From IMG/VR virus record IMGVR_UViG_3300014494_000005, positions 62,001 to 126,000 of that record: a stretch of DNA of 64,000 bases. One strand, given 5' to 3'. Under the pieces are notes generated by a model. It was not told where the DNA came from. It saw only the letters and a program-made list of their open reading frames with translations, and searched no databases. Below, piece by piece: positions 26,419 to 41,916 of this stretch; the stretch's first letter is position 1, and each line of letters begins with the position of its first letter. The position numbers were made by a program, and so were the translations under genes.

Positions 26419-27261
26419 TTATTTTAATCCTTGTATTAATGTATCGTTATATTTAATTCCATCATAACCATTTTTCATTGCTTTTTCTGCAATTGCTTTA
26501 TTTTTTAGATTCATTGATGGCACATTATATTGCTCACTTAATTTCTCAAAATTTACATGTGGAAACCAATTTTTTGCTAATATATCAACTGGTTCTTGTC
26601 CATCTTTATAAATAACACCTAATGCTTGTATGTCCAATAAATTTTCAAAATCAATTTCATATTTATCATATCCATCAATTGGTTTTAACATAAAAAAGTT
26701 TCCAATAACTGAATTTTCTTTAATTGGTTCTTTTCTATATGCGACAATTGTTTTTTCATTTTTACTTGGTGTTTCTGCTTGTAATGCAAGATTATCTTCT
26801 TCCAGAGAATCTAAAAATTCTGTATTTGTATTACCCTTACCACTTTCAGCATTATTATAATAATTGATTGCACCTTGATTTTCTACTTCTTCCATATTAC
26901 GTGCTTGCTCATATTCGTAAATATCTTGAATCTTATTTAATACCCTTGCTGTATCTTTTTCATTTAAATCAATTTTAATTGCTTTAAGTAACTCATTGTC
27001 AATTAATGCTTTAGTATATCTGTGGTGTCCATCAATTATTTGATTATCAATGCTTAACCAAATTGGATTCATATCATTAATATTACATTTTTCCATTTCA
27101 TCTGAATATACGACAGGTTGTGATGTTTTAATATCATCGTCTTCACTTGGATTTAATGAAATTAATTCATAATTTATACCTTCTTCATCAAGTTTTTGAA
27201 GAACTATTTCAAACGGTGCACTAACTTGTGGTAGATGATATGGTCTTCCATTTTTAAGCAT
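26419..27261 (-). CDS. ParB/Srx-like nuclease-domain protein
   Basis: PIWLS.DNQIIDGHHRY..A; upstream motif 27282. Confidence 0.65.
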   Translation of the reverse strand: MLKNGRPYHLPQVSAPFEIVLQKLDEEGINYELISLNPSEDDDIKTSQPVVYSDEMEKCNINDMNPIWLSIDNQIIDGHHRYTKALIDNELLKAIKIDLNEKDTARVLNKIQDIYEYEQARNMEEVENQGAINYYNNAESGKGNTNTEFLDSLEEDNLALQAETPSKNEKTIVAYRKEPIKENSVIGNFFMLKPIDGYDKYEIDFENLLDIQALGVIYKDGQEPVDILAKNWFPHVNFEKLSEQYNVPSMNLKNKAIAEKAMKNGYDGIKYNDTLIQGLK

Positions 27262-27281
27262 AATGTGTTATTAAATTTTAT

Positions 27282-27290
27282 TATAAATAC
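27282..27290 (-). promoter_or_regulatory. Phage GTATTTATA upstream motif
   Basis: 21 nt before ATG 27261. Confidence 0.7.
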
Positions 27291-27297
27291 AGTTCTT

Positions 27298-27864
27298 TTA
27301 ATTTTTTAATATATTTTGAATTTCTTCACGAATAATATTTAATATTGTAAATTTGTTTTCTAATAAAGATATTTTACCTTCTTTAGCTAAATATATGTTA
27401 AATCTAATACCTTTTGGAATCTGTTTCTTTATTGCTTCATAAGATTGAATATCAGTATCACGGTCTTCATAAACATTTATTTCCTTTAATTCTGGAAATT
27501 GCTGAATATAACGTAATGTTTTTTTACCCTTATCTGGTTCAGCACGTTTCATATCTACTTTATCAACACTAATATGATTTGCATCAAGTATTGCTTGAAC
27601 TTGTGGACGTAGTTTTTCCATTCTTGATGTAAGAATTACCACATAAGTATTTGGTTTTGCTTGTTCTTCTTTTAATTGTTTTAATACACTTGGAAATGGT
27701 TTAATATTGAAAACATTTAAATCCAAACTCTCAGGTCTGCCCCACCAACCTTGATATGGATATGGTTTTCCTATTTTCTCAGACCACTGAACTTTACCTA
27801 TTTCTTTTTCAGGACTCATTATGAGTGTCGAGTCAAAATCAAATACACAAAGTCTTTTTATCAT
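27298..27864 (-). CDS. HAD-family phosphatase (RNA-repair 'Swiss army knife' HAD type)
   Basis: CVFDFDSTL (DxD motif I), VILTSR (motif II), VYEDR (motif IV). Start moved to ATG 27864, overlapping the upstream TGA (ATGA). Confidence 0.8.
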   Translation of the reverse strand: MIKRLCVFDFDSTLIMSPEKEIGKVQWSEKIGKPYPYQGWWGRPESLDLNVFNIKPFPSVLKQLKEEQAKPNTYVVILTSRMEKLRPQVQAILDANHISVDKVDMKRAEPDKGKKTLRYIQQFPELKEINVYEDRDTDIQSYEAIKKQIPKGIRFNIYLAKEGKISLLENKFTILNIIREEIQNILKN

Positions 27865-28364
27865 AACAAACAATTATATTTCATTTCATTAATATTTCCT
27901 ATTTCTTCGCAATAAGGTTCAAAAAATCTTTTTGGTATTATATACATATCCATTTCTTTGAAAACACCTTTCTTTTGTTCAATCCTTGCTTTTTTCTTAT
28001 ATTCAATTTGATTTATATTTTCAACAATACAATCATGTATTCTTTTTGTTTTAGCAATATATGTAATTTTACCATCACTAATAATCCAATAATCAGCTTT
28101 TGTAATTAATAATCCTGATTGTCTTCCCCAATATCCGGTTTCAATACAAATATTGCCACTAATACTACCCATTTTATCAAATTTACATTCAATTGTTTTT
28201 TGTTTTTCTGCAAAGTTACCATTAAAAAGTATAATATCATAATAACTATATTCTTCTTTTTTCATATTTTTATATGCAAGAGGAAATAATTTTTCATTTA
28301 AATCTTTTAAACAAAAATCCTCAAATTCAAATCCCATTCTTGATGATTCTTTCCAATCAGCCAT
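27861..28364 (-). CDS. PD-(D/E)XK-family nuclease-like protein
   Basis: G.EFE.F, YDIILF, TIECKFD, then ICIET. Confidence 0.6.
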   Translation of the reverse strand: MADWKESSRMGFEFEDFCLKDLNEKLFPLAYKNMKKEEYSYYDIILFNGNFAEKQKTIECKFDKMGSISGNICIETGYWGRQSGLLITKADYWIISDGKITYIAKTKRIHDCIVENINQIEYKKKARIEQKKGVFKEMDMYIIPKRFFEPYCEEIGNINEMKYNCLL

Positions 28365-28365
28365 G

Positions 28366-28749
28366 TTATTTATATTCTACTTCAGTTACTTTACCTGTCA
28401 CAAATATAGGTCTTTTTAATGGTTGCCAATTAATTAATTTATTTGACATCATTGGTTTACCACCATTTGCTCGATTAACAGCCATTGTTATATGTGCTTT
28501 AGCATTATGCGTTTCAAAACCACTGACACCAACAGCCATTACTTTATCATCTATAGCGAATTCATTAACACTTAATCGTACTGGTAATCCTAAATATTTT
28601 TCAAGTTCTGGGTCAATTTCACCCATGTTTATTGTCATATGGTCACAAATTATTTTCCAATCATTAGGAATTATTGAACTAAAACGTTCAATAAGTCGTT
28701 GTTTTGACCTATCATCAAGAACGACTGCACTATAAGATATGTTATTCAT
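28366..28749 (-). CDS. 2H phosphoesterase (cyclic phosphodiesterase, tRNA-ligase CPD-like)
   Basis: Two HxT motifs: CDHMTIN and KAHITMA. Confidence 0.75.
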   Translation of the reverse strand: MNNISYSAVVLDDRSKQRLIERFSSIIPNDWKIICDHMTINMGEIDPELEKYLGLPVRLSVNEFAIDDKVMAVGVSGFETHNAKAHITMAVNRANGGKPMMSNKLINWQPLKRPIFVTGKVTEVEYK

Positions 28750-29405
28750 TAATATGTAAATTTTGTTAAAACATTATAATTTTTGTTTAATGCTTTTAAT
28801 GCTATTTCAACTTCTTTAAAGCATTCATTAATACCACCACCACATATTACTAATTTACCTGAAAATTTTTTTAAATAATCCATTAAGTCTGGTATATTAA
28901 TACAATCTTGTGCTGGTTCTAAAAGGTCACGAACAACACTTGTATCATAATCATATTGTCGCATAAATCCATTCCACATTTCTTCATCAATATCACGACT
29001 ATCATTAATATTGTGTTGAATCATATATTTAACAAGATTAACTGTTTCATCTTCTTCAGCACCTTCATCCATACAGGTTCTAAAAAAAGCATAACCTTTA
29101 TCTAAGTATTTGATAACCTGTAAATTATCTTCTTCCAATCCATTTTCTAACAACCACATTTTATAATCATTTTCACTTATCATACCTAATGTATCAGCAC
29201 CATTATATAATAAAGTAATTGAATTCATGTTATAAATATTTTCATTAATAAATTTTGTAAATTGATAAATATTAAAAGTAAAACCTTTTTCATATTCTGG
29301 TTGAATATCAACAGAAATTAAATTAGCGTTTTGAACAAGATTAATTCCAGAATCTTCCAATAATTTATTACGTTGCTGTTCTTTAATTATAATTTCTCTT
29401 TTCAT
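28749..29405 (-). CDS. Cysteine hydrolase (isochorismatase/nicotinamidase-like) fold protein
   Basis: LISVDIQP (catalytic D) and LVICGGGINECF (catalytic C); leader MKREIII.EQQ...LLE. Confidence 0.5.
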   Translation of the reverse strand: MKREIIIKEQQRNKLLEDSGINLVQNANLISVDIQPEYEKGFTFNIYQFTKFINENIYNMNSITLLYNGADTLGMISENDYKMWLLENGLEEDNLQVIKYLDKGYAFFRTCMDEGAEEDETVNLVKYMIQHNINDSRDIDEEMWNGFMRQYDYDTSVVRDLLEPAQDCINIPDLMDYLKKFSGKLVICGGGINECFKEVEIALKALNKNYNVLTKFTY

Positions 29406-29435
29406 TTAGTTAAAATTTCTTTTATGAAGATGTTT

Positions 29436-32400
29436 TTAAGCATAAAATATTTTATTTTTAATTGGTATTGCTTGCGGAGAATCCATAATATCTTCACCAT
29501 TTATATATAATTCTTCAATTTTTAATGATGTATTTTTAAATAATGTTATTTCTTTTTCATCTTCGCCAAGAGCCAAATCCATATTAGCATATATTGTATT
29601 AGTCCAATCAATATTGTCTTCTTTCACAGATGTTTTTATTATTGCTTTATTATATTTTTTACTATCTCCCCAATGTGCTTCAGCAGCATTTTCTTCCCAA
29701 GACCAATAAATACCTAAATGTTTTCCTTGTGTACCAATATGATAAATCCAATTATCATCAACTGTCATTTCTCTCCAAATATCAATAGTATCATTTGGTT
29801 TTATTTTTTCTTTTATTTTATCTATTACATCATCATATTTATATTTTAATTCCCATATAAACCATTCTTTAAAATCTTCATTTTGTTCAATAACTTCCTT
29901 ATCTTCATCCTCCAAATTATTTTCATATTTATAATATTCAATATATCTTTCATAATTATCACTACGTTTCACATCTTTTATATATTGCGGTGTTATTATA
30001 TTATCTGAAGTTATTGAATCAATTGGTGTTTCATTTAAAACATCATTATCTGTAAGTTTCCATAATAATTTATGTTTTAATTTTTCATTATGGCTAAAAT
30101 CTTCATAATTATTTTGTAAAAATTCTAATACTGATGCTTCATTTGGGTCTGAATATTCTGCTCTTCCTCTTCCACTTTCAGTATTCCATATATCATATTC
30201 TTTAGCAAAGAAATTAATATCAACTATTTTATTGTTTACAACATATTTACCATCACCAACTTCATGATATTCTTCAGTAAGATTAATAGGCATACTACCA
30301 TATTTAATAAGACCATAATATTCTAAATAAAAATCATATTGTGGATTTTTTCTTTTTGTTGCACGTAATATTTCAATTGATGTTTCTTTTTGGTCTTCAC
30401 CTCTTTGAATAAATTCTTCACCCGAATCACTCAATCCAAAATTATTAGAATCACTTACTCTTTGTAATACTTGATAATTGAAATTATTATATACATATTC
30501 GGTAATTCCTAATATATCTGCCATATCTGCATGATTAAAAGCACCATCAGATTGTGCAACAAATAAGTTTCCATCACTATCAGCAATTGCTCTAACATTT
30601 TTATCAAAATTAGTTAACGATTTTGGATTCTTAAAAAATAAATCACCCTCTTCACTAATTGCATATGGTTTTTCTTTATTTTTTTCTATACCACCCATTG
30701 CTTTAACATCCATTGCAGTATTTGAATCAGGAACATTAAAAGTTTTTTCTGCATATTTATCTGCAACACCTTCTTGTTTTATTGATTTATTTTTTTGACT
30801 TGTCAAATTTAATAAATCATCTCGATTATTCCTAACATTATTTGAATATACCTTTAACAATAATGATTTTAACATATCACCAATCTCTTTACCTTTTAAT
30901 CCAAATTGAATTAAATCATTGCCATTAATTGCTAGTTCACCAACTGCTTTTGGATATTTGCCTTGTAATAATTCTTGTGCTGCGGTTTCAATTACACTAG
31001 GTATTATTTGGCTTTGAAGTGATTGTGGTGATGTTACATACATATTATGCACAACTGTTCGTGCTTCAATTAAATTAGTTGCTTCACCACTATCAAATGC
31101 CATTTCAAGTGCTTTAATTTCCTTATAAGTATCAATATCACCCTTTAAATTATTTTTATAAAATTCTGCAGGATTTGGTAATAATCGTATTAATAAATAA
31201 ATAAACTCACCTATTGTTTTAACTTCTTCAAATGGACTTCTATCAATTGTTGATTGTTTTAAATCAAAATTAAAAATTTGTTGAAATAAACCAGTGTCTT
31301 TAAGTAGTTGTATACCAATACGTTTGTCACCTTTTTTTAAAATTTTATCGAACTCAATTAATATTCTTTCTGGCGGAATTTCTTTAATACGACTTGCATT
31401 ATCTTTAATCATTTGCATTGTTTGTGGTTCAATTGTAAAATCAAAACGACTTGCAAACCCTATCATTCGCATCATACGTAATGGGTCATCTGAAAATGCC
31501 TGTGGATTTGCAGCAGAAATTTGTTTATTTTTTATATCTTCCAATCCACCGAGTGGGTCAATAAATTTACCTGAATTAATATTAATTGCCATTGCATTCA
31601 GCTTTGCGTCACGTCTCGTCAAATCATCTTCAATTGGAAGATTTTCATCACTCTGAACATCAAAACCATGATAACCACCTTCACCATTTGGTTTTTCTTT
31701 ACGTGGTAACGCTATATCATAATCAGTACCATCTTTATCAATAAATTTTATAACACCAAATGATTTGCCAACAACATCAACTTTACCAAATTTTTGTAAT
31801 TGCGATATTAATAAATCAATTGATGTGTTTCTAACAATTAAATCAATATCTTTATTGGGTTTGTTAAGTACCAAATCTCTCACAACCCCACCAACAGCAT
31901 AAATTTCAGACCCTAAGTCATTTATAAGTGATTGAATAAATGGTTTTTGTTTTAAATTATTTACAAATTCAGTAATTTTATTATTTGGTTGTATATTGTT
32001 TTCGCACATATTCTCTGCAATATTTATTGAATCTAAATCAAAAACTACTTTAGCTGGAAATGATGAAATTCCTAATTCTCGTAATGCATCAAATCTATGA
32101 CCACCTTCTAAAACATATGAACCATCTTCATCAATAACAACAATTAGTGGACTAATTTCTTTATTATATTCAATCTGTTTTGCTAATTTTTTTGTTTTTT
32201 GTTCTTCATCAGGAGAATAATATTTTAAATCTCCCATTTGTGGAAATGAATTGAATGAAACTTCTCTAATTCCATTAAGTATTTCATAATTTGTTAATGA
32301 TGCTTCAATTGAATTCATGTTTGGAACATCATTTCGAATTATTAATCCATTAATATTATTTCCATTTATTATTGGAAATTCATGATTTAATGTTTCATAA

Positions 32401-32498
32401 CTAAAATTTTGTGCATTACTGATAACAGATTCATTAATTTGTTTTCTCATATAATTTTCAAATAATATTATTTCACTATTAATAATGTCTATTAGCAT
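29436..32498 (-). CDS. Polyvalent protein: ParB-like + class II CCA-adding/poly(A) polymerase-family nucleotidyltransferase + two unknown domains + ADP-ribosyltransferase-like domain
   Basis: EGGHRFDAL (ParB); YAVGGVVRDL...KDIDL, DDLTRRDAKLNAMA, FSDDPLRMMR, PERI..EF.K (CCA); IWRE / GIYWSW / EDEKEI (R-S-E ART). Start moved to MLIDII (32498), 13 nt from the motif. Confidence 0.85.
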   Translation of the reverse strand: MLIDIINSEIILFENYMRKQINESVISNAQNFSYETLNHEFPIINGNNINGLIIRNDVPNMNSIEASLTNYEILNGIREVSFNSFPQMGDLKYYSPDEEQKTKKLAKQIEYNKEISPLIVVIDEDGSYVLEGGHRFDALRELGISSFPAKVVFDLDSINIAENMCENNIQPNNKITEFVNNLKQKPFIQSLINDLGSEIYAVGGVVRDLVLNKPNKDIDLIVRNTSIDLLISQLQKFGKVDVVGKSFGVIKFIDKDGTDYDIALPRKEKPNGEGGYHGFDVQSDENLPIEDDLTRRDAKLNAMAININSGKFIDPLGGLEDIKNKQISAANPQAFSDDPLRMMRMIGFASRFDFTIEPQTMQMIKDNASRIKEIPPERILIEFDKILKKGDKRIGIQLLKDTGLFQQIFNFDLKQSTIDRSPFEEVKTIGEFIYLLIRLLPNPAEFYKNNLKGDIDTYKEIKALEMAFDSGEATNLIEARTVVHNMYVTSPQSLQSQIIPSVIETAAQELLQGKYPKAVGELAINGNDLIQFGLKGKEIGDMLKSLLLKVYSNNVRNNRDDLLNLTSQKNKSIKQEGVADKYAEKTFNVPDSNTAMDVKAMGGIEKNKEKPYAISEEGDLFFKNPKSLTNFDKNVRAIADSDGNLFVAQSDGAFNHADMADILGITEYVYNNFNYQVLQRVSDSNNFGLSDSGEEFIQRGEDQKETSIEILRATKRKNPQYDFYLEYYGLIKYGSMPINLTEEYHEVGDGKYVVNNKIVDINFFAKEYDIWNTESGRGRAEYSDPNEASVLEFLQNNYEDFSHNEKLKHKLLWKLTDNDVLNETPIDSITSDNIITPQYIKDVKRSDNYERYIEYYKYENNLEDEDKEVIEQNEDFKEWFIWELKYKYDDVIDKIKEKIKPNDTIDIWREMTVDDNWIYHIGTQGKHLGIYWSWEENAAEAHWGDSKKYNKAIIKTSVKEDNIDWTNTIYANMDLALGEDEKEITLFKNTSLKIEELYINGEDIMDSPQAIPIKNKIFYA

Positions 32499-33669: not shown

Positions 33670-36600
33670 TTTATTTTTTTCTTGTGTTCTCTTGCATAAT
33701 TATTTACAAACTTATTATATATATTTTCACTTATTTTATGATTCATACCGCTTTTTACTTTTTTTCTAAATTCTACTTCTGCTTTATTGGCAATTTCATG
33801 TGCACCATCTTTGCCACTATCGTCATTACTATACTTTAAGCCATAATATTTCATTAAATGTCTTTCTAGCGTTTCATGTAAAAGTATTGCACCTAAATCA
33901 TCAGGTTTAATTAAAAATACATCATCAATCCAAATTTCGTCTTCAGGAATATATTTAGCATATTTTTGCTCTTTCTTTGGTAAATCCAAATCAACGTAAT
34001 GATGTCCACCGTCAACATATTCATCGAACGAATTTTTTCTCACATGGTCACCATTAATTGCATATACTTTATAGTCATCTTCTTGAAATAAGAACAATTT
34101 ATCTAATCCATGTATTTTATTGTCTTTTTCAATTTGCTTTTCAAAATCCTTAAATGATTGTTCATTAAGATTATTATTTTTCATTAAAACTAAATAACCA
34201 CCATCACCATCTTCAGCAATAATTTCGCCAGTTAAATCAAATTCATCAATATCTGAAAAATCATTTTCATTTGAATATCTTGTAGCATCTTCAAATGTTT
34301 TTGTAACCCAGACAATATTATTAGCAGGATATTTATTCAATTCAGCTAATTTTTCTTCAGGTATATTCATTTCTTCATTACCAAGTTCATCTCTTTCAAA
34401 CCTAACAACATCTCCAGCAGATGTACCTTTTTTTTGTGAAAATAAACTATCTACCCGATATGCTTTACCAATATAATTAACATTTTCATTAATTGTTTTA
34501 ATATCAAGATTATTAATATCACCTTGATTACAAGCTACACTTGTATTTCCCAAACCACCTAATCTACATTTCTTTTTTACTGTAACAGCTTGTGCTCCTT
34601 TCATAAATGATTTTTTTCCAATTTCATCAAGAGCAAATTTATCTTGTGTTGCATCACCTACAACATGATGATATTCTAAATCTTCTTTTACACTTTCTGG
34701 AGTTGTTGGTACGTTATTATCTGTAACTGGAGATGTATCATTATTTTCATATGGTGGAAAATTATCCTGTCCAATACTATTTGGTGTTGAGAATTTTGAA
34801 GTTCCATCTTCAGTTATTTTTATATTTTCTGCACCATTCGGTTGTAAGTAACCATTACTAAATCCCACATCAAAAAATGCAATTACTCCATTTTTTTTAT
34901 ATCCTAAATTAGTATAATTAAAATAATCCAAACTTTCAACTCCATATTGTTTTGCTTCTTCAGCAATTCTTAATATAGAATAAAAAAATTCAGCATCTTC
35001 TGGATTTTTTGACATATATCCATCAATTTTTTTTGTATCTATGTCCCCATATCCATTTATATAATAATCAATAATATCATAAAGTCTGAGATTAAATATT
35101 TTTCCAAAAATAAAATCAATTCTTTCTTTAAGTCTTTTAAATTTTTGTGGGTCTGTTTTTAATTTTTCCAAAACAATTGCATATGTTTTAGAAATATATG
35201 TATTTTTTGAATCGATTGTAAATACATTATATGGTTGTGCTATATATTTTAATGGTTTATTTATAAGTTTTAAATTTTCTGCTGCTTCACTATTATCTGC
35301 AGTTATTTTTAAAATTTTATCATCACCAATATCATAAGCAACACCATATTCACCAGCATCAATAAATTTTGGTTCGTTATATCCTCTTATTTTAGCAATT
35401 TGTTTTGCGATATTATCTGCAATATTTCTATTATATTTTTCATCTAATATTTCTTCGTTTTCAGGTAAAAATATAATATTTGCATCTCCCAAATCAGGTT
35501 CATTAACGCCATAATAATCACCAACATCAAAAAATTTTAAAATACCATCCTCATATCCAAGATTTTTGGGATTACTATAATCATCTGATTTAATATTATA
35601 ACTCAACAGTTCTTTTTTTATTTCAAATAATTCTATTAACCAATCATATGCTTGTTGTCTTTCAATATTAGAAATATTTACTTCAGGTTTTTCTGTAAGT
35701 ATATTTTTTGCCAAATTAACTAAATTATTATAATCAAAACGTTTTTTCATTATAATATAGAAATCAACTGTCGTCATATCATTTGGCATAATAGTATCTA
35801 TTATTTCAACATTTCGAACAAATTGTTGAACTGGTTTGTCAATAATATTACGTTCAATTATTCCAAAAAATGATTTATTTTTTTCAGTATCAACTATTTT
35901 ATATATATTGTAAACAATTGCAATATGTATTGGTTTTACTCTTATTAATTTAGCTGCAGCATCTGCTTCACTAATATCAGTAGTAAGTTTTAAAATCTTT
36001 GTATCTCCAATATCAAATACATGACCACCAGTACTACCTGCCATATATTCTATAGTTTTTATTCCTAATTTTTCTGCAATTGAATTTGCTAATTGAATTG
36101 CATAATTTTTATCAAATACGATGTCTTGAACTTGTGGTACTTCATGTTTAATATCTTCATTTATAACATATTCTTCACTACTAAGTGGTTCTCTATCATA
36201 ATAATTTTGTGAAATAAGATATTTTTGAAGTTCTAATAAATTATTATAAAATTTTTTCTTATCATCAACATGATTTAATGTTTCCTTAAGATTATTTACA
36301 CATTCATGAAAATTATCTACAAGTTGTGGCATATTTTTTATAGGCTTATTTGGATATATGCTTCTTCTTATAATAAATTCTTTAAATTCTTCATTTATTA
36401 CACCATCGCCATCACCTACACCATATGGCATTAATGCCCACATTCCATGTCTTTGGTCTTGTCCAACGTTACCTATATCGGAAAGAATATCATCATTACC
36501 ATTAGCAAAATTATACAATTCATACATGTGATATTTTTGTTTTTTTTGAGGACTATAATGAGTATCATATACTTCATCATTAAGACCATAATCAGTTAAT

Positions 36601-37157
36601 ACAATTGTGGGTTGACCATCATGAAGTACTTCACCATAAGAACTTGGTCTACTTAAATCACCAACATTTATTGAATAATTTGCAACAAAATCAATTAAAT
36701 CAATAACAAATTCATTATTATCTAATTGATTTTTAATATTTTCATCTTGTCCAAATATTGGTCTACCACCTCTATTTTCAGATTCATAGTTTCTTAAATA
36801 ATAAAATAAATCGCTAAGACTTGGAATACCAGTTAATTCTTTGATTCTCTTTTCACCCACCTTTTTTACTTTTTCCGCAATCAACCAACTATCATCATCT
36901 GCATTGTCATAAATAATTGTAACAATATGTTGTGTATCTCTATAATATCCAATATTGGCTTCGGCTTCATTTTGTGCAATACCTTTTTGATTTTTTGCTA
37001 ATTTTAATACTTTCTGACCATCAATATCATAAACAATTCTACCACTACCACTACCAATTCTTGATAGATGTTCATTAGCATATTGTATTCTACTTGCAAA
37101 TGATTTTATGTTAAGAAATTCCGTTAAGAAATTCTGTTTAAATTCATCGTATGTCAT
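33666..37157 (-). CDS. Polyvalent protein: three tandem protein-kinase-like domains + ART-like domain + zincin metallopeptidase
   Basis: Gly loops GSGSGRIVY / AGSTGGHVF / AGEYGVAY; VLKL / ILKL / ILKI; D...N.G and DYG/DVG x3; AYR...WVT..A.RY; LLHETLE...AHEIA. Confidence 0.85.
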   Translation of the reverse strand: MTYDEFKQNFLTEFLNIKSFASRIQYANEHLSRIGSGSGRIVYDIDGQKVLKLAKNQKGIAQNEAEANIGYYRDTQHIVTIIYDNADDDSWLIAEKVKKVGEKRIKELTGIPSLSDLFYYLRNYESENRGGRPIFGQDENIKNQLDNNEFVIDLIDFVANYSINVGDLSRPSSYGEVLHDGQPTIVLTDYGLNDEVYDTHYSPQKKQKYHMYELYNFANGNDDILSDIGNVGQDQRHGMWALMPYGVGDGDGVINEEFKEFIIRRSIYPNKPIKNMPQLVDNFHECVNNLKETLNHVDDKKKFYNNLLELQKYLISQNYYDREPLSSEEYVINEDIKHEVPQVQDIVFDKNYAIQLANSIAEKLGIKTIEYMAGSTGGHVFDIGDTKILKLTTDISEADAAAKLIRVKPIHIAIVYNIYKIVDTEKNKSFFGIIERNIIDKPVQQFVRNVEIIDTIMPNDMTTVDFYIIMKKRFDYNNLVNLAKNILTEKPEVNISNIERQQAYDWLIELFEIKKELLSYNIKSDDYSNPKNLGYEDGILKFFDVGDYYGVNEPDLGDANIIFLPENEEILDEKYNRNIADNIAKQIAKIRGYNEPKFIDAGEYGVAYDIGDDKILKITADNSEAAENLKLINKPLKYIAQPYNVFTIDSKNTYISKTYAIVLEKLKTDPQKFKRLKERIDFIFGKIFNLRLYDIIDYYINGYGDIDTKKIDGYMSKNPEDAEFFYSILRIAEEAKQYGVESLDYFNYTNLGYKKNGVIAFFDVGFSNGYLQPNGAENIKITEDGTSKFSTPNSIGQDNFPPYENNDTSPVTDNNVPTTPESVKEDLEYHHVVGDATQDKFALDEIGKKSFMKGAQAVTVKKKCRLGGLGNTSVACNQGDINNLDIKTINENVNYIGKAYRVDSLFSQKKGTSAGDVVRFERDELGNEEMNIPEEKLAELNKYPANNIVWVTKTFEDATRYSNENDFSDIDEFDLTGEIIAEDGDGGYLVLMKNNNLNEQSFKDFEKQIEKDNKIHGLDKLFLFQEDDYKVYAINGDHVRKNSFDEYVDGGHHYVDLDLPKKEQKYAKYIPEDEIWIDDVFLIKPDDLGAILLHETLERHLMKYYGLKYSNDDSGKDGAHEIANKAEVEFRKKVKSGMNHKISENIYNKFVNNYAREHKKKIN

Positions 37158-37227: not shown

Positions 37228-37941
37228 TTATTTTACTGTTTTTGCTTTACTCTTTGCTTGTATTTCTCGAATAGTTTCGTATACAAGTGTTTTTATCATT
37301 TCACGATTTTCCTGTAAAACTTCTTTAATTCTTTCAACTGCATACATTTCAATGATTGTACCTTTAATTGCTTCTTCTACAACAGGACCAAAATTATCTA
37401 TTAGATAATTATCAACAATTTTCTTTACATTCTCAACCAAATAACCTTCATTAATTTGCATTGGTTGTCCAGAATTTGGATTGTAAGATGATATTCCAGT
37501 ATTCATACCCTTATTCGATACTATTCCTGCAGATATTGCTTCAGCAAGTGTTTGTTTTCTTTTATTTTCAAGGTCTTTATATAATAATTCATCTCTTTCC
37601 GGTGACATATCAACTGCTTCATGTATAACTGGATGTTGTTGCGGACGTTGTTGTTGTGGATGTTGTTGTTGTGGATGTTGTGGTTCAACAGTTTCATTAA
37701 TCGGTAGTCTTGTTGTTTCTTTTTTCTTTACAGCCACTTGATTATCAACAATTTTAACTAAATTACTTGATGCTGTATCTCTACCAGTTTTTAAAGATTC
37801 TATTAATCCATATAAAAATGTATCTCTTGGTGATGCTCCGAATTGATTCTGTTCACCCATACCATCAGGTGCTATATTTTTCTCTTTTCTACGACTTGCT
37901 ATTTCGGTTTTAAGTTTATTTAAATCAGGTTTTGTTGCCAT
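37228..37941 (-). CDS. Hypothetical protein with Q/H/P-rich linker
   Basis: 237 aa, PQHPQQQHPQQQRPQQHP; own upstream motif. Confidence 0.7.
   Translation of the reverse strand: MATKPDLNKLKTEIASRRKEKNIAPDGMGEQNQFGASPRDTFLYGLIESLKTGRDTASSNLVKIVDNQVAVKKKETTRLPINETVEPQHPQQQHPQQQRPQQHPVIHEAVDMSPERDELLYKDLENKRKQTLAEAISAGIVSNKGMNTGISSYNPNSGQPMQINEGYLVENVKKIVDNYLIDNFGPVVEEAIKGTIIEMYAVERIKEVLQENREMIKTLVYETIREIQAKSKAKTVK
37631..37682. repeat. 15-bp imperfect tandem repeat (QQQHP)
   Basis: ggatgttgttgttgt-like units x3. Confidence 0.75.
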
Positions 37942-37963: not shown

Positions 37964-37972
37964 TATAAATAC
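37964..37972 (-). promoter_or_regulatory. Phage GTATTTATA upstream motif
   Basis: 23 nt before ATG 37941. Confidence 0.7.
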
Positions 37973-37973
37973 T

Positions 37974-38921
37974 TTATTGTTTGAAAAAAGTTTTTCTTTG
38001 AACAAGATTTTTTTCATTTTCTTTAACCATTGTAGGTGTTTTATTTATATTTGGTTGTTTTTTCATGACCGAATCTTTTTGTTGTTTAATGAAACTTTGT
38101 TCTGCAGGTACGGTTGTTTTTGTTGTTCTAACCAATTTATCATAAAGATTTGTTAATTTTCCAACAATTGCTTCTGGTGGAAGTTTATCTTTTTGAGCAA
38201 TATCAACAAGATGAAAATCTCCTTTTTTATCAATAGCAACTAAATATCTATCAGGTGATTTTTTCATAACTCTTTTAGCCACATCATATAAATTTTGAAT
38301 ATCTTTTGCTGTTGCATCTCTTTTTTGCTTACCAGCATTATAAAATTTCTTAAATTTATTTGTTTGTGTATCAAATTGTGATTTATCTACTTTTGCTGCA
38401 ACAACTGAAGGTGCTGCAACCTTACCTAAACCTTTTGTTTGTACTGATTTTGGCTCTTTTGGTGAAACGGAAGCAATAATATTTGTCATTTGTTTATCGT
38501 TTTGATTATATAATGGTGGAATCATTACATTACCATCTTCATCAACAAAACGTTTTCCTGTTGGATATGCTGAACTAATTTTGTCTACAAGAAATAATCT
38601 CCAACCAGCTTTTTCTTTACCATCATTATCTCTATGGTATTCATGGTCAATTCTTTTTCTTGGACTATCTGCTCTAAGACTATCACTTTTACCTTTATCT
38701 TGCCATGCCCTCAAAACTTTATTACCTGCAGTACTTGTACCTAATACAAATGGTCGTATTGTTCGATAACCTCTTTCAATTGTATTATCACCAGCATAAT
38801 AAATATAAATATACTCATGATTTTGAATTGCATTGACAATATCATTCTCACCGACACCTTCTTTTAAAAGATGACGAAAATTTTTAATATTATTGAATAA
38901 TATTTTAATTTCAGTTAACAT
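37974..38921 (-). CDS. WYL-like (Sm/SH3-fold) domain protein
   Basis: IYIYYAG......RTIRPFVLG......VLRAWQ...WRLFLVDKISS. Start moved to MLTE (38921). Confidence 0.6.
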   Translation of the reverse strand: MLTEIKILFNNIKNFRHLLKEGVGENDIVNAIQNHEYIYIYYAGDNTIERGYRTIRPFVLGTSTAGNKVLRAWQDKGKSDSLRADSPRKRIDHEYHRDNDGKEKAGWRLFLVDKISSAYPTGKRFVDEDGNVMIPPLYNQNDKQMTNIIASVSPKEPKSVQTKGLGKVAAPSVVAAKVDKSQFDTQTNKFKKFYNAGKQKRDATAKDIQNLYDVAKRVMKKSPDRYLVAIDKKGDFHLVDIAQKDKLPPEAIVGKLTNLYDKLVRTTKTTVPAEQSFIKQQKDSVMKKQPNINKTPTMVKENEKNLVQRKTFFKQ

Positions 38922-38926
38922 TATAA

Positions 38927-39208
38927 TTATGCTGTTGCTGAACAATATTCGTGTCCCGGAATATAACGTTTACTGTTTTTTGCAATTGAACAAGTTCTAT
39001 CTGCAATATCTTCATTAGTACCAATTGGAGCACCCGGTGTTTGTGGGTCTCTACCTTTACAATCGCCATCAGAAATTGTGTCTGGACTTCCTGCACAATA
39101 TTCTTTAGCACAAGTATAACGACCTGAATTCCTAACAAGATTTTCATCTCTAAAACTTGCACTATTTACTAATAGTCTACTACTATTATCACATGTAATA
39201 TCTGCCAT
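38927..39208 (-). CDS. Small putative virion protein
   Basis: 93 aa, P..ISDGD.KG...IGT..DI..R pattern, six Cys; upstream motif 39241. Confidence 0.55.
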   Translation of the reverse strand: MADITCDNSSRLLVNSASFRDENLVRNSGRYTCAKEYCAGSPDTISDGDCKGRDPQTPGAPIGTNEDIADRTCSIAKNSKRYIPGHEYCSATA

Positions 39209-39240
39209 TTTTTATGTTTTAATTTTTTATTATTATTTAC

Positions 39241-39249
39241 TATAAATAG
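39241..39249 (-). promoter_or_regulatory. Variant motif (sense CTATTTATA)
   Basis: 33 nt before ATG 39208. Confidence 0.6.
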
Positions 39250-39261
39250 TTCTAAACTAAA

Positions 39262-40044
39262 TTATTTTTCATCTTCATATGACTTAAACACAAGTGTAAT
39301 ATATTCTATTAAATGAGGTACAATATCTAAATATTTCATTTCAGAAACACTATACCAACCATATTTTGTATTTTCATCATTTAATTTAACATCTGTTTCT
39401 TCACCAGTATATCTACAAGCAAATACATGTTCAATACTATCAGTATGTCTTTGAATACTAAATGTTTTTATAAATTTTTTAATTTCTAATTTAGTTTCTT
39501 CAAGAATTTCTCTTTCAATCGCTTGTTGTGGTTTTTCACCCTTTTTAATTTCACCGCCAACTAATGACCATTTATTTGGCATCCAAATTTTACTATCATC
39601 TGCTCTTTTAAGTAATAAAATTTTGTTATTATTATTAACAATTACTGCAACTGCGTTTTTTTTTAATTCTTTCTTTTCTTCATTTAACCTTGGTGTTTGA
39701 TATGGCATTAATTCTGAATTAGGATTTGTTGTCATATCTTGTTTAATTTTTTTTGACCTTTCAATACTTGCACGGTCTTGATTTAATGTTGTTTCAATAA
39801 AATTTTTCATTAAATCACCGCCAGCAAGTGCGTATTGTATTTTATCTCCAGTTTGTGGATTAAAATAATCAAAAAAATTCTTTAATCTTTTTAATGCTTG
39901 ATATGTCAAAACACCGTTTTTAAGTATAAAATTAGCTCGTTTTAGACCATCTGTATCTGAAGTGGATGCTTTTGCTATCTCAATACTTTTAAGTATATTT
40001 TGAGGTATATAATATTGTTTATTTAGTAATTCTTGATTTGCCAT
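39262..40044 (-). CDS. Two-domain protein: N-terminal unknown + Nudix hydrolase
   Basis: Nudix box GGEIKKGEKPQQAIEREILEETKL; ILLLKRA; W.LVGG. Confidence 0.85.
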   Translation of the reverse strand: MANQELLNKQYYIPQNILKSIEIAKASTSDTDGLKRANFILKNGVLTYQALKRLKNFFDYFNPQTGDKIQYALAGGDLMKNFIETTLNQDRASIERSKKIKQDMTTNPNSELMPYQTPRLNEEKKELKKNAVAVIVNNNNKILLLKRADDSKIWMPNKWSLVGGEIKKGEKPQQAIEREILEETKLEIKKFIKTFSIQRHTDSIEHVFACRYTGEETDVKLNDENTKYGWYSVSEMKYLDIVPHLIEYITLVFKSYEDEK

Positions 40045-41285
40045 TATGATGTCATTATATTAACTGTAGATTTATTTATTATTCTTATCATATCTTTAAT
40101 TTTATCACAAGTAATATTAATTTGATTATCAATATCTTTCAAAAATTCTTTTTCATTAATTCTTATAATATGACAATTGTGTTTTTCCTTAAGATAATTT
40201 TCACGTATAATATCTCTTTCTTTACATTTTATTTTATTATGATTAATTTCATCCCATTCAATACATATATTATATTTCTCAATATAACCATCCACCCAAT
40301 ATCTTATAAATTTTTTCTCACCGCCATTTAATGCATGTTGAATTGGTAAACCTAGCTTTTCGGAAATCATATCTAAATAAATTATTGAATTCGCATTATA
40401 TGATGGAACACGTTTTTTCCAAATTTCACCATATCTTTCAATCATAGTATTTACAATTTTTTCTGAAACCAATTTATTTTGTGAGGGATATTCAACACCA
40501 AATCTTTCTAAACTCGTTTTTTTTATTTTATCTTTAATCTCTAAAGAAGAATTTGGATTCTTCACACCATATCTTTTCAAATTTGTTTTATTTGCCTTTT
40601 CTTTAACATTTTTATTCAATAATGAACATTCAACACCATATTTAATTAAATTAGTTCTTTTAATTTTTTCTTTGGTATCAGATGATTGTAAATTATATTC
40701 AACACCAAATTTTTTCAAACATGTTTGTTTTTTCTTTTCTTTAATTTTGGCAGATTGTGAATTATGTTCAACACCAAATTTTAATAAATTGGTTTGTTTT
40801 ATTTTATTTTTAGTATCTTTACACAATAAATTTGTTGTTGTGCCAAATTTTTTCAAACATGTTTGTTTTCTCTTTTCTCTAACTTCTGCTAATTGTGATT
40901 GATGCTCAACACCATGTTTTTCGAAAAATAATTTTTTTCTTTTTTCTTGTACTTCTAGTGATTGTAATGGATTTTCAACGCCATATTTTTTCAAATAACC
41001 TTGTTTTATTCTATTTTTAATATCCTCATCAGAACCTTTACATTTTACTGAACAATGCGTAGTATAACCTCTATTAAATTTTATAAATTTAACTAAATTA
41101 CCACACTTACATTTCGGTAATTCAGATATATTATTTAGATAATTAAATAACATTTGTCCCCAATTTGTTATCTTAAAATTTTTGTTAAATTCTATTATGT
41201 TATTAAGTTCATTAGGAAATTCAGTTCTTATTTGCGAAATTCCTTTATAACCACCATCTAAAAAATTTAAAAAATTATTATTCAT
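40044..41285 (-). CDS. Homing-endonuclease-like protein with KQT.LKKFGV repeats and C-terminal PD-(D/E)XK-like domain
   Basis: About 8 repeats K.KQTCLKKFGV....QS..IK; C-terminal YWVDGYIEKYNICIEWDE..H. Confidence 0.7.
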   Translation of the reverse strand: MNNNFLNFLDGGYKGISQIRTEFPNELNNIIEFNKNFKITNWGQMLFNYLNNISELPKCKCGNLVKFIKFNRGYTTHCSVKCKGSDEDIKNRIKQGYLKKYGVENPLQSLEVQEKRKKLFFEKHGVEHQSQLAEVREKRKQTCLKKFGTTTNLLCKDTKNKIKQTNLLKFGVEHNSQSAKIKEKKKQTCLKKFGVEYNLQSSDTKEKIKRTNLIKYGVECSLLNKNVKEKANKTNLKRYGVKNPNSSLEIKDKIKKTSLERFGVEYPSQNKLVSEKIVNTMIERYGEIWKKRVPSYNANSIIYLDMISEKLGLPIQHALNGGEKKFIRYWVDGYIEKYNICIEWDEINHNKIKCKERDIIRENYLKEKHNCHIIRINEKEFLKDIDNQINITCDKIKDMIRIINKSTVNIMTS

Positions 41286-41916
41286 TTTTTCTTTCTAATA
41301 AATTTATTAATTTGTCAATATCTTTTTTATCAAGTTTATTAATTAAACCCGCAACTTTTTGAAGTTTTTTGTCTTTAATTTCTTCATCTTCTGATTTCTT
41401 TGACATTTCATCTTCAGATTTTTTATTAACAAGTTTGTCTTCTTCTACTTTCGATTCAGTAATTGAATTCACCTCATCAATTGGTTCTTTAAATGCTTTT
41501 TCAAAATGTGGTTCCATTAATTTAATTATTTTTTTGGACCATTCTATATCTGCTTTCTGACATTCCTCTGAATGTCCACCTTCACTTGCTTTTCTATAAT
41601 CACTTTTTAATTTATTTGGATTTTTATAAAAATATTGTAAATCCTTCATATATTTTTCATGAACAAGTTCAGCCAAATCTTTTAATAATTCTATTTGACT
41701 ATCATTTTCTTTTCCTTCCATGAATGGTAGTAAGGAAAAACCTAGGCGACCTAAGAAATCATATCTAAAGGGTTGCGTACCAATTTTAGAATTATAGTCT
41801 GTAGTATTATTAGCTTGACTTTCTAAATCACTGCCATTTGTAGGTATATCGTTCTTACCAATTAACTCACCATTCGAATCAATTATTTCGAGTAAGTCTT
41901 TCTTTTTTAATTTCAT
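41278..41916 (-). CDS. Hypothetical protein (possible head-internal protein)
   Basis: 212 aa; leader MKLKKKDLLE; own upstream motif. Confidence 0.65.
   Translation of the reverse strand: MKLKKKDLLEIIDSNGELIGKNDIPTNGSDLESQANNTTDYNSKIGTQPFRYDFLGRLGFSLLPFMEGKENDSQIELLKDLAELVHEKYMKDLQYFYKNPNKLKSDYRKASEGGHSEECQKADIEWSKKIIKLMEPHFEKAFKEPIDEVNSITESKVEEDKLVNKKSEDEMSKKSEDEEIKDKKLQKVAGLINKLDKKDIDKLINLLERKNE

What the first reader, a model, noticed from the sequence alone, without database searches (positions are those of the whole stretch)
26419..41916. Whole 15-kb island of small enzymes shares the same xxE leader/linker grammar
Seen: neighbouring standalone genes also have short leaders or linkers ending in L-x-E just before the enzyme domain: cysteine hydrolase MKREIII.EQQRNKLLE (29355-63), WYL-like ...RHLLKE (38859-67), Nudix ...PRLNE (39679-87), 212-aa MKLKKKDLLE, 237-aa PINE/QINE. 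Most carry the same upstream motif as the structural genes. Established: T4 internal proteins carry short N-terminal capsid-targeting leaders removed by gp21. Inference: the island is a co-regulated set of head-packaged cargo proteins.
Basis: partly seen in the sequence, partly recalled or inferred. Interest (0 to 1): 0.65.

Follow-up and report, generated by a model that had tools for sequence, protein, structure and literature searches.

The report
Late-gene island of likely head-packaged enzymes
In a 349-kb uncultured peat jumbo phage with a T4-type head, a late-promoter-driven gene block encodes modular enzyme polyproteins and small proteins. Their conserved hydrophobic-x-Glu sites look like targets of the T4-family head protease, so part of the island, not all of it, is probably cargo packed into the head.

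Summary
L-x-E is 1.6x over shuffles in the island against 1.25x genome-wide, and 11% of equal-sized gene windows are as dense.

Comparative evidence is stronger:
- The phage has a T4 gp23-family capsid protein and a gp21-family (Peptidase_S77) prohead protease. T4 gp21 cuts after L/I-x-E.
- In about 15-120 homologues per protein, the named sites are kept in 81-100% of homologues with a variable middle residue.
- Hydrophobic-x-Glu pairs are conserved in excess of their flanks in the scaffold protein (p=1e-7), the small island proteins (p=2e-4; the 218-aa protein p=0.004) and the two giant proteins (p=0.004). They are not in PolB, the helicase or three other controls (pooled p=0.87).
- The 1163-aa and 1032-aa proteins are cassette-swapping polyproteins whose junctions end in hydrophobic-x-Glu. 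The standalone 2H, HAD and CCA genes begin where fused relatives carry such a junction.
- An oriented promoter-like motif, aGTATTTATAnnAAA, heads every minus-strand island operon, and also the sheath, portal, protease and terminase genes, but not PolB.

"Whole island" is overstated. HAD, 2H, the 167-aa protein, the 123-aa and 93-aa proteins, the 280-aa ParB-like protein and the homing endonucleases carry no leader of the kind claimed. The leaders are not homologous to each other. Packaging itself is untested.

The parts
41278..41916 (-). 212-aa acidic protein of unknown fold. Its 10-residue N-terminal leader ends in L-x-E (41887-41895).
   Evidence: No Pfam or PHROG hit. The leader site is kept in 19/19 homologues with nine different middle residues. 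Its length and ending match the 10-residue T4 ipII/ipIII leader read.
41931..41939 (-). Promoter-like motif GTATTTATA heading the operon 212-aa / homing endonuclease / Nudix.
   Evidence: Exact match, 23 nt before the ATG. Present in 17/17 distinct upstream regions of relatives.
40044..41285 (-). DUF7487-type homing endonuclease. A mobile insert, not cargo.
   Evidence: Pfam DUF7487 3.6e-42, PHROG homing endonuclease. Patchy in relatives. Four paralogues in the genome.
39262..40044 (-). Nudix hydrolase (residues ~125-260) behind a conserved 105-residue N-domain. L-N-E lies in the gap-rich linker (39679-39687).
   Evidence: Pfam NUDIX 1.5e-18. The linker site is kept in 88% of 17 homologues. 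The protein as a whole shows no excess conservation of such sites (p=0.47).
38927..39208 (-). 93-aa Cys-rich protein with its own promoter variant CTATTTATA (39241-39249). No leader.
   Evidence: The promoter is exact in 8/10 relatives.
37974..38921 (-). WYL-like protein. Its 21-residue leader (counted from the ATG) ends in L-K-E (38859-38867).
   Evidence: Atlas lead to WYL, 0.90. The site is kept in 16/16 homologues with middle residue K, T or N. Site-excess p=0.039, from only two sites.
37228..37941 (-). 237-aa helical protein with many conserved hydrophobic-x-Glu sites. Two I-N-E sites (37693-37701 and 37447-37455) border hypervariable stretches. Promoter at 37964-37972.
   Evidence: 7 of 11 sites are kept in at least 85% of 16 homologues. 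Strongest single-protein signal, p=2.4e-4, resembling the scaffold. Promoter exact in 15/16 relatives.
33666..37157 (-). 1163-aa modular polyprotein. It holds three truncated kinase-like modules, a small Cys module and further modules. Junctions end in L-D-E (34623-34631), I-N-E (34485-34493) and L-N-E (34161-34169). The N-terminus starts MTYDEF, like the T4 leader. Promoter variant at 37177-37185.
   Evidence: Relatives insert or swap 150-300-residue modules exactly at these junctions. AlphaFold model of residues 1-208 has pLDDT 71, and every top Foldseek hit is a protein-kinase-like fold. It is the only one of 881 ORFs with that N-terminal pattern. Site excess p=0.019.
32665..33669 (+). LAGLIDADG homing endonuclease gene lying between the two halves of the polyprotein.
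   Evidence: Pfam LAGLIDADG_3, PHROG endonuclease 8e-44. In relative L063 the two halves form one 2317-aa ORF.
29436..32498 (-). 1020-aa protein. Order of parts: leader ending Q-I-N-E (32430-32438), ParB-like domain, class II CCA-adding / poly(A) polymerase core, then two variable C-terminal modules. Promoter at 32511-32519.
   Evidence: PolyA_pol 8.7e-22 and PHROG tRNA nucleotidyltransferase 4.5e-58. PDB CCA-adding enzymes 2.5e-23 and ParB 0.016. Fused relatives carry hydrophobic-x-Glu just before the CCA core, where standalone versions start. Site excess p=0.038.
28749..29405 (-). 218-aa protein with a weak isochorismatase-like lead. Its leader has I-K-E (residues 7-9) and L-L-E (29355-29363).
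   Evidence: No Pfam or PHROG hit. Atlas lead of only 0.83. 719 homologues found. Sites kept in 97% and 99% of 119 homologues. Site excess p=0.004.
28366..28749 (-). 2H phosphoesterase (tRNA-ligase CPD-like), standalone here with no leader.
   Evidence: Pfam tRNA_lig_CPD, 24.2 bits against a cut-off of 23. In 7 relatives it is the C-terminal module of 600-1900-aa polyproteins. In 6 of those 7 a hydrophobic-x-Glu lies 2-7 residues before the point where this gene starts.
27861..28364 (-). 167-aa protein of unknown function, no leader.
   Evidence: Only phrog_13596, function unknown. Site excess p=0.93.
27298..27873 (-). HAD phosphatase of the RNA-repair 'Swiss Army Knife' type. No leader; the catalytic DxD lies at the N-terminus.
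   Evidence: Pfam HAD_SAK_1, 32 bits against a cut-off of 25.6. Fused into a 1507-aa polyprotein in L052, behind L-I-E.
26419..27261 (-). 280-aa protein with a ParB-like DGHHR motif. Promoter at 27282-27290. No N-terminal leader seen.
   Evidence: phrog_2859 8.7e-8. Alignment. Promoter exact in 4/4 relatives. Site excess p=0.08 from only 4 homologues.
26039..26410 (-). 123-aa protein with a Lys/Glu-rich tail, last gene of the block. It contains no hydrophobic-x-Glu site.

Best explanation
The island is a late-transcribed block of a T4-superfamily jumbo phage. It encodes a modular, cassette-swapping enzyme polyprotein, here split into a 1163-aa and a 1020-aa gene by a homing-endonuclease gene, plus several small proteins.

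Shown:
- The phage has a gp23-family capsid protein and a gp21-family serine protease.
- The island's operons start with the same oriented promoter-like motif as the sheath, portal, protease and terminase genes.
- Hydrophobic-x-Glu tripeptides in the polyproteins and in the 237-, 218-, 323- and 212-aa proteins are conserved beyond their surroundings. The putative scaffold protein (assigned only by its position between protease and capsid genes) shows the same; replication proteins do not.
- Polyprotein modules are exchanged exactly at such tripeptides.

Inferred:
- These proteins are built into the prohead core late in infection.
- The prohead protease cuts them after the Glu, removing short leaders and separating polyprotein modules.
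- The pieces stay in the head and enter the next host with the DNA. Those pieces are kinase-like modules, a CCA-adding enzyme, ParB-like domains, and in relatives also 2H and HAD RNA-end enzymes.

The standalone HAD, 2H and 167-aa genes, the 93-aa and 123-aa proteins and the homing endonucleases show no sign of being substrates in this phage.
For: - Protease: Pfam Peptidase_S77 4.5e-14. It aligns with T4 gp21 in two blocks that include the HP and G-x-SSRG motifs, which I take from memory to hold the catalytic His and Ser. An intein lies between the blocks.
- Capsid protein: Pfam Gp23 2e-74. I-N-E at residues 59-61 is kept in 72 homologues, 16 residues before the block that aligns with T4 gp23 residue 98.
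- T4 gp21 cuts after L/I-x-E and removes leaders of 7-65 residues (PMC9026906). T4 ipII and ipIII leaders end in IAE.
- Excess conservation of hydrophobic-x-Glu over flanks, compared with hydrophobic-x-other: scaffold p=1e-7; 212/Nudix/323/237 pooled p=1.7e-4; polyproteins p=0.0036; 218-aa p=0.004. Controls: PolB 0.84, helicase 0.59, three others 0.31-0.77, pooled 0.87. Glu ranks first of the P1 residues observed in the island and 13th in the controls.
- Sites conserved inside poorly conserved flanks: 5/78 with Glu against 3/605 with any other residue (Fisher 7e-4).
- Module swaps and gene fusion or fission occur at the junctions.
Against: - No proteomic or structural datum exists. No cultured relative carries these genes.
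- The raw motif density is unexceptional.
- PolB also has a conserved N-terminal I-L-x-E, so a single conserved site proves little.
- The island's leaders are not homologous to each other. They are also not homologous to the real shared leader found on five genes elsewhere.
- 2H, HAD and the CCA core work as leaderless standalone genes in this or related phages. That suggests packaging is not required for their function.
- The phage has 33 tRNA genes and two RNA ligases, which gives these enzymes an ordinary cytoplasmic role.
- The Nudix protein shows no overall excess.
- The conservation tests use related sequences and automatic alignments, so the p-values are approximate.
Confidence: 0.5

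Rival explanations
1. The island proteins are ordinary cytoplasmic late enzymes. The CCA-adding enzyme, 2H phosphoesterase and HAD phosphatase mature or repair the phage's own tRNAs and cleaved RNA ends, and the Nudix protein does nucleotide housekeeping. The hydrophobic-x-Glu sites are structural features of helices and linkers. Nothing is packaged.
For: - HAD_SAK_1 and tRNA_lig_CPD are both above the Pfam cut-offs.
- The CCA-adding core matches PDB enzymes at 2.5e-23.
- The genome has 33 tRNA genes and Rnl1- and Rnl2-type RNA ligases.
- Leaderless standalone versions of 2H, HAD and the CCA core exist.
- The raw motif density is not unusual.
- PolB has a conserved N-terminal site too.
Against: - The excess is specific to Glu. 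It is shared with the scaffold protein and absent from five control proteins.
- Modules are swapped exactly at these tripeptides in about a dozen different junction types.
- The late promoter is shared with head and tail genes although the block sits beside replication genes that lack it.
Confidence: 0.28
2. The giant proteins are polyvalent proteins in the sense of Iyer et al. 2017. They are either processed by a peptidase of their own or not processed at all, and the junction tripeptides are just ends of modules. The prohead protease plays no part.
For: - The architecture resembles published polyvalent proteins: truncated kinase, Pol-beta-type nucleotidyltransferase and ParB-like domains, with cassette-like small genes nearby (PMC5512222).
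- The C-terminal module of the 1163-aa protein has invariant H-E-x-x-E and a later His on two confident helices.
Against: - No PolyVal Pfam family, including its metallopeptidase, is matched even at E=5.
- The fold search of the C-terminal module gave nothing, and H-E-x-x-E is not the zincin HExxH.
- The junction motif is the known specificity of the protease family this phage encodes.
Confidence: 0.15
3. The grammar is a reading artefact. In a 26% G+C genome rich in Leu, Ile, Lys, Asn and Glu, every protein holds several L/I-x-E tripeptides, so one can always be found before a domain.
For: - About 2.1 [LI]-x-E per 100 residues in the island and 1.5 elsewhere.
- 37-45 of 416 windows are as dense.
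- The finding allowed a site to be a 'leader or linker' at any position.
Against: - Site conservation is 81-100% across homologues of 40-88% identity, with a variable middle residue.
- The internal control against all other P1 residues.
- The negative controls.
Confidence: 0.07

Closest known systems
Phage T4 internal proteins IPI-III and Alt, with the capsid targeting sequence and gp21 processing
   Same: - The protease family is the same (Peptidase_S77), as is the capsid family (Gp23).
- Candidate leaders of 10-23 residues end in L/I-x-E, within T4's range of 7-65 residues.
- Expression is late.
- The 1163-aa protein begins MTYDEF, close to T4's MKTYQEF.
   Different: - T4 leaders are near-identical between cargo genes. 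The island's are unrelated to each other.
- T4 cargo consists of small proteins plus one enzyme. Here the candidates include polyproteins of more than 1000 residues with internal junction sites.
- Nothing here is shown experimentally.
Processed inner-body and ejection proteins of phiKZ, 201phi2-1 and SPN3US
   Same: Jumbo phages in which many head-internal proteins are cut after Glu at a three-residue motif by a diverged gp21 homologue, with redundant sites (PMC9026906).
   Different: - Their motif is S/A/G-x-E, not hydrophobic-x-E.
- Those phages have a different capsid lineage and virion RNA polymerases.
- No homology to the island proteins was found.
Polyvalent proteins of phages and conjugative elements (Iyer, Burroughs, Anand, de Souza, Aravind 2017)
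   Same: - Many conflict-type enzymatic domains sit in one polypeptide.
- There is a truncated protein-kinase-like module, reported for Bacteroidetes and Verrucomicrobia phages, plus a Pol-beta-superfamily transferase and a ParB-like domain.
- Cassette-like neighbouring genes are present.
- Capsid packaging is predicted.
   Different: - None of the PolyVal Pfam models matches.
- No zincin peptidase was recognised.
- Processing is proposed here to be by the prohead protease at hydrophobic-x-Glu junctions. As far as I read that paper, it does not describe this.
RNA-repair 'Swiss Army Knife' proteins and the T4 tRNA repair pathway
   Same: A HAD_SAK_1 phosphatase, a 2H/CPD phosphoesterase and a CCA-adding enzyme are present, with RNA ligases elsewhere in the genome.
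   Different: - No ligase or polynucleotide kinase lies in the island.
- In relatives the enzymes are modules of a late-expressed polyprotein.

Membership tests
T4-type prohead-protease-processed internal (cargo) proteins | The phage encodes a gp21-family (Peptidase_S77) prohead protease and a gp23-family capsid | tested here: met
   Pfam S77 4.5e-14 and Gp23 2e-74. BLASTP to T4 gp21 1e-9 and to gp23 1e-24.
T4-type prohead-protease-processed internal (cargo) proteins | An N-terminal leader or linker ends in L/I-x-E and is conserved in relatives | tested here: met
   Met for the 212-, 218-, 323- and 237-aa proteins, the Nudix linker and the polyprotein junctions. Not met for HAD, 2H, and the 167-, 123-, 93- and 280-aa proteins.
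T4-type prohead-protease-processed internal (cargo) proteins | A common capsid targeting sequence is shared by the cargo genes | tested here: not met
   A profile of the real shared leader on five genes elsewhere finds no island protein. The island leaders do not resemble each other. Only the 1163-aa N-terminus resembles the T4 leader.
T4-type prohead-protease-processed internal (cargo) proteins | Late expression together with head genes | tested here: inconclusive
   A conserved promoter-like motif is shared with the sheath, portal, protease and terminase genes. Timing is not measured. Contigs from RNA libraries cover the island but cannot prove transcription.
T4-type prohead-protease-processed internal (cargo) proteins | The protein is present in the virion and cut after the Glu | not testable with these tools
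   No isolate, and no proteome of a relative.
Polyvalent proteins (Iyer et al. 2017) | Several unrelated enzymatic conflict domains in one polypeptide of a portal-terminase phage | tested here: met
   Kinase-like fold. CCA/Pol-beta transferase and ParB-like domain. A 2317-aa single ORF in L063. Portal and terminase present.
Polyvalent proteins (Iyer et al. 2017) | Match to the family-specific Pfam models (kinase, ParB, metallopeptidase of polyvalent proteins) | tested here: not met
   No such family matched at E up to 5 on single modules or on whole proteins.
RNA repair module (SAK-type HAD + 2H phosphoesterase + CCA-adding enzyme) | Pfam matches above curated cut-offs for the component enzymes | tested here: met
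   HAD_SAK_1 32 bits against 25.6. tRNA_lig_CPD 24.2 against 23. PolyA_pol 78 against 23.
RNA repair module (SAK-type HAD + 2H phosphoesterase + CCA-adding enzyme) | A ligase and/or kinase sits in the same locus to complete the repair | tested here: not met
   The RNA ligases lie at genome positions 21 kb and 248 kb, not in the island. No RtcB.
   No Pfam or PHROG hit. Only a 0.83 language-model lead.
   No Pfam hit. Language-model lead of 0.90 with 191 shared features.

The most novel reading that the evidence does not exclude
In this widespread family of peat and bioreactor jumbo phages, the T4-type prohead protease doubles as a polyprotein-processing enzyme. It cuts a recombining, cassette-bearing polyprotein at hydrophobic-x-Glu junctions inside the prohead. 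Each virion would then inject a variable kit of free enzymes into the next host: truncated kinases, a CCA-adding enzyme, 2H and HAD RNA-end healing enzymes and ParB-like domains. That would amount to a virion-delivered tRNA/RNA repair and host-modification kit.
Probability: 0.3. Interest if true: 0.8.

Novelty: new variant of a known kind. Interest (0 to 1): 0.6.

Why it matters
If true, it joins two ideas that so far stand apart. One is the T4 leader-and-protease route for loading proteins into heads. The other is the computationally predicted polyvalent proteins of phages.

It would give the polyvalent proteins a concrete processing mechanism. It would show cargo evolving by swapping cassettes at protease sites. 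It would also suggest that phages can deliver RNA-repair enzymes ahead of their own gene expression, for example against host tRNA-cleaving defences.

It also yields a simple sequence test: excess conservation of hydrophobic-x-Glu relative to flanks. That test could nominate head cargo in uncultured T4-superfamily phages. If false, the island is an ordinary late auxiliary-enzyme block.

Tried and rejected
- Near-DNA search of the island in cultured phages found nothing. tblastn of the 237-, 323- and 212-aa proteins in cultured phages gave no useful match, so no virion proteome can be borrowed.
- A profile of the shared leader on five genes outside the window does not find island proteins. The idea of one common targeting sequence is rejected.
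- Pfam on single modules at E up to 5 gave no polyvalent-protein families.
- The 1163-aa protein has no PDB sequence match.
- The AlphaFold model of its C-terminal module is poor (pLDDT 62.5) and the Foldseek search is empty. An embedded peptidase is neither shown nor excluded.
- The N-terminal L-T-E of the 1163-aa protein is kept in only a minority of homologues (0.33 by the automated count; about 10/17 by eye). It is not counted as a site.
- Paralogue search of island proteins in the genome found only homing endonucleases and one 184-aa paralogue of a CCA-protein module.
- The sigma-70 and terminator scan was uninformative: 141 sites against 150 expected.
- Contigs from four peat metatranscriptome runs cover the island at about 100% identity. 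DNA carry-over cannot be excluded, and contigs show no transcript ends.
- Not used: complex prediction, the large representative search, and any alternative genetic code.

Full report
**Context.** The window is bases 62,001-126,000 of a 348,923-bp IMG/VR virus record with 26% G+C. There is no near-DNA match among cultured phages. PolB is only about 26% identical to that of the nearest cultured phages. The capsid protein is about 40% identical to those of uncultured huge phages, a Microcystis phage and Flavobacterium phages. The same DNA occurs in peat, permafrost and bioreactor metagenomes. IMG/VR holds many related contigs of 200-360 kb, with PolB at 55-88% identity and the capsid protein at 75-93%.

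**What the island encodes.** All genes are on the minus strand except one homing endonuclease. Reading from PolB downstream:
- A 212-aa acidic protein of unknown fold.
- A DUF7487 homing endonuclease.
- A Nudix hydrolase behind a conserved 105-residue N-domain.
- A 93-aa Cys-rich protein.
- A 315/323-aa protein with a WYL lead.
- A 237-aa helical protein.
- A 1163-aa protein.
- A LAGLIDADG endonuclease on the plus strand.
- A 1020-aa protein made of a ParB-like domain, a class II CCA-adding core (PDB 2.5e-23) and two further modules.
- A 218-aa protein with only a weak isochorismatase lead.
- A 2H/CPD phosphoesterase.
- A 167-aa protein of unknown function.
- A HAD_SAK_1 phosphatase.
- A 280-aa ParB-like protein.
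- A 123-aa protein.

The flanks are a glycosyltransferase and a radical-SAM gene on one side, and PolB, another endonuclease and a helicase on the other. Baseplate and fibre genes lie further out.

**Checking the observation by counting.** The quoted motifs are at the quoted coordinates.
- Island L-x-E is 1.63x its shuffle expectation, but the rest of the genome is 1.25x.
- 11% of windows of 14 consecutive genes are as dense.
- [LI]-N-E is in the top 3% of windows.
- An L-x-E within the first 30 residues is found in 8/14 ORFs against 23% genome-wide (Fisher 0.005, uncorrected; 12 of 416 windows as high).

With about two [LI]-x-E per 100 residues, a site 'before the domain' can nearly always be found. 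Counting alone does not carry the claim.

**The promoter-like motif.**
- GTATTTATA occurs 80 times in the genome, 66 of them in the 11.5% that is intergenic. It peaks 20-30 nt before start codons.
- It lies on the coding strand upstream of 50 genes, against 4 for its reverse complement. The extended consensus is aGTATTTATAnnAAA.
- It precedes the tail sheath, prohead protease, portal and terminase genes, and also some homing endonucleases, an RNR subunit and a transposase.
- In the island it, or a close variant (one mismatch; two before the 1163-aa gene), heads the operons that start at 41916, 39208, 37941, 37157, 32498 and 27261.
- In distinct relatives it is exact before the 212-aa gene (17/17), the 237-aa gene (15/16), the 93-aa gene (8/10) and the 280-aa gene (4/4). 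It is absent before PolB (0/28).
- By my own reading of the upstream sequences, the helicase, primase and exonuclease genes show TTGACA/TATAAT-like boxes instead, and PolB simply lacks the motif. The formal sigma-70 scan of 25,000-43,000 was uninformative.

Co-regulation with structural genes is therefore well supported in silico. Its timing is not measured.

**The head machinery is T4-type.** Outside the window, at genome 210.7-216.1 kb, lie three genes in the T4 order 21-22-23:
- A Gp23-family capsid protein (2e-74).
- A 561-aa scaffold-like protein.
- A Peptidase_S77 protease (4.5e-14) interrupted by an intein.

The protease aligns with T4 gp21 over the HP and G-x-SSRG motifs, which I recall hold the catalytic residues. 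T4 gp21 cuts after L/I-x-E and removes leaders of 7-65 residues. Short leaders target the internal proteins into the core (PMC9026906). The T4 ipII and ipIII leaders were read directly as ten residues ending IAE.

The capsid protein here has I-N-E at residues 59-61 in all 72 homologues (I/L, N/K). This is 16 residues before the block that aligns with T4 gp23 from residue 98. The position is analogous to the T4 Glu65 cut; equivalence is not shown. The scaffold-like protein has 24 such tripeptides in 561 residues. One is kept in 100% of 58 homologues inside flanks of 22% identity.

**Conservation of the named sites**.

| Protein | Site | Kept in | Middle residue |
|---|---|---|---|
| 212-aa | residues 8-10 | 19/19 | L, F, Y, V, T, K, S, D, N |
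| 323-aa | L-K-E | 16/16 | K, T, N |
| Nudix linker | L-N-E | 88% of 17 | variable |
| 237-aa | residues 81-83 | 81% of 16 | variable |
| 237-aa | residues 163-165 | 100% of 16 | N only |
| 218-aa | residues 7-9 | 97% of 119 | variable |
| 218-aa | residues 15-17 | 99% of 119 | variable |

Both 237-aa sites lie next to hypervariable stretches. But PolB also has a conserved N-terminal I-L-x-E, so conservation of a single site is not specific.

**A discriminating test.** For every [LIM]-x-X tripeptide of a query, I compared two quantities. The first is the joint conservation of the hydrophobic residue and the third residue. The second is the mean identity of the 16 flanking columns.

Hydrophobic-x-Glu exceeds all other third residues in:
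- The scaffold (p=1e-7).
- The pooled 212/Nudix/323/237 proteins (p=1.7e-4).
- The two giant proteins (p=0.0036).
- The 218-aa family (p=0.004).

It does not in PolB (0.84), the helicase (0.59), a 140-aa protein (0.76), or three proteins near the head module (0.31, 0.35, 0.77). Pooled controls give 0.87. The capsid protein and the protease are marginal (0.08, 0.10).

By protein, 237-aa gives 2.4e-4, 1163-aa 0.019, 1020-aa 0.038, 323-aa 0.039, 280-aa 0.08, 212-aa 0.135, HAD 0.17, Nudix 0.47, 2H 0.59 and 167-aa 0.93.

Sites that are conserved (at least 0.8) within poorly conserved flanks (at most 0.45) number 5/78 with Glu against 3/605 otherwise (Fisher 7e-4). This is robust over five threshold pairs, with p from 8e-4 to 0.04.

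The sequences are related and the alignments automatic, so these p-values are indicative only.

**The giant proteins are cassette polyproteins.**
- Aligned relatives of the 1163-aa protein carry different 150-300-residue modules, inserted or exchanged exactly after three short conserved junction peptides. In the query these end L-D-E (residues 843-845), I-N-E (889-891) and L-N-E (997-999). The inserted modules themselves end in hydrophobic-x-Glu.
- The CCA core is a standalone gene in several relatives, starting at the very point where fused versions carry hydrophobic-N/S/D-Glu.
- The 2H enzyme, standalone here, is the last module of 600-1900-aa ORFs in seven relatives. Six of these have hydrophobic-x-Glu 2-7 residues before the point where the standalone gene starts. 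HAD is fused behind L-I-E in one relative.
- In the closest non-identical relative the two giant genes are one 2317-aa ORF. In the window a LAGLIDADG gene lies between them, and the second half has acquired its own promoter, a leader ending Q-I-N-E and a ParB-like domain.
- The first module folds as a short protein-kinase-like domain (pLDDT 71; all top Foldseek hits are kinases or aminoglycoside phosphotransferases, probability 0.9-0.99, TM about 0.33).
- By eye, two further segments of the 1163-aa protein carry a similar glycine-rich motif, which is why I describe three kinase-like modules; only the first was modelled.
- The architecture is the theme of Iyer et al. 2017: a truncated kinase, a Pol-beta-type transferase, a ParB-like domain and nearby cassette genes (PMC5512222). 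None of that paper's Pfam families is matched.
- The 1163-aa N-terminus, MTYDEF, resembles T4's MKTYQEF. It is the only such start among 881 ORFs. This is a post hoc resemblance.

**Interpretation.** The best reading, about 50%, is that part of the island encodes substrates of the prohead protease that are loaded into the head. This part comprises the polyproteins, the 237-aa and 218-aa proteins, and probably the 212-aa and 323-aa proteins. The Nudix protein is uncertain.

The main rival, about 28%, is a cytoplasmic role. The phage has 33 tRNA genes and two RNA ligases, so a CCA-adding enzyme and RNA-end healing enzymes have an ordinary job. Their leaderless standalone forms argue that packaging is not needed for them.

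Processing by another protease, or none, gets about 15%. It cannot be excluded, because the C-terminal module with an invariant H-E-x-x-E could not be assigned a fold. Pure chance remains plausible only for the genes without a signal.

**Verdict.** 'Whole island' and 'same grammar' are overstated.

Noticed in passing
Outside the window: G000:C1 145932-148313, 148325-148777, 203377-204102, 233628-234182, 234208-234705 (all minus strand): Five genes share a truly homologous N-terminal leader of about 25 residues (consensus ..K.RLFEVM.K....KLNE) ending in L-N/T-E. These are better candidates for T4-like targeted internal proteins than anything in the island. A profile of this leader finds only these five.
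   Followed up: partly
Outside the window: G000:C1 214152-216080 (-): The prohead protease gene (Peptidase_S77) is interrupted by an intein of about 400 residues, placed between the HP block (which I take to hold the catalytic His) and the G-x-SSRG block (Ser).
   Followed up: partly
window 32665-33669 (+) and L063:5663-12616: A LAGLIDADG homing endonuclease gene lies between the 1163-aa and 1020-aa genes. In the closest non-identical relative the two are one 2317-aa ORF with a different module before the CCA core.
   Followed up: yes
Outside the window: G000:C1 134525-282791: ARAGORN finds 33 tRNA genes, including one with a CUA (amber-reading) anticodon at 268386-268463. TAG ends only 17 of 429 predicted genes. 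All island ORFs are open under code 11, so no other code was used.
   Followed up: no
Outside the window: G000:C1 about 21049-21546 (-) and 248207-248767 (+): Two RNA ligase genes (RNA_ligase and RNA_lig_T4_1 families) lie far from the island. No RtcB was found.
   Followed up: no
window 38927-39208 (-): A conserved 93-aa Cys-rich protein (SDGD..G, IG.N.DI motifs) has its own conserved late-type promoter. Function unknown; no hydrophobic-x-Glu site.
   Followed up: partly
window 3126-4268, 19013-19915, 40044-41285, 45992-47128 and elsewhere in the genome: The genome is dense in homing endonucleases (HNH/DUF7487 and LAGLIDADG). Several sit behind the late-type promoter motif and between conserved genes.
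   Followed up: no
window 45593-45601 (residues 7-9 of PolB, gene 41948-45619, minus strand): PolB has a conserved N-terminal I-L-x-E with a variable middle residue, in 96% of 27 homologues. This warns that one conserved site is not evidence of processing.
   Followed up: yes
window 36000-42000: Contigs from four peat metatranscriptome runs (three studies) cover most of this stretch at about 100% identity, with breaks in or near several intergenic regions. This is consistent with transcription in nature, but DNA carry-over is not excluded.
   Followed up: partly
Outside the window: G000:C1 225209-228878 (-): The terminase large-subunit match covers only a 398-aa ORF. The two ORFs downstream of it (386 and 435 aa) have no assignment, so the gene may be split by an intein or a mobile element.
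   Followed up: no
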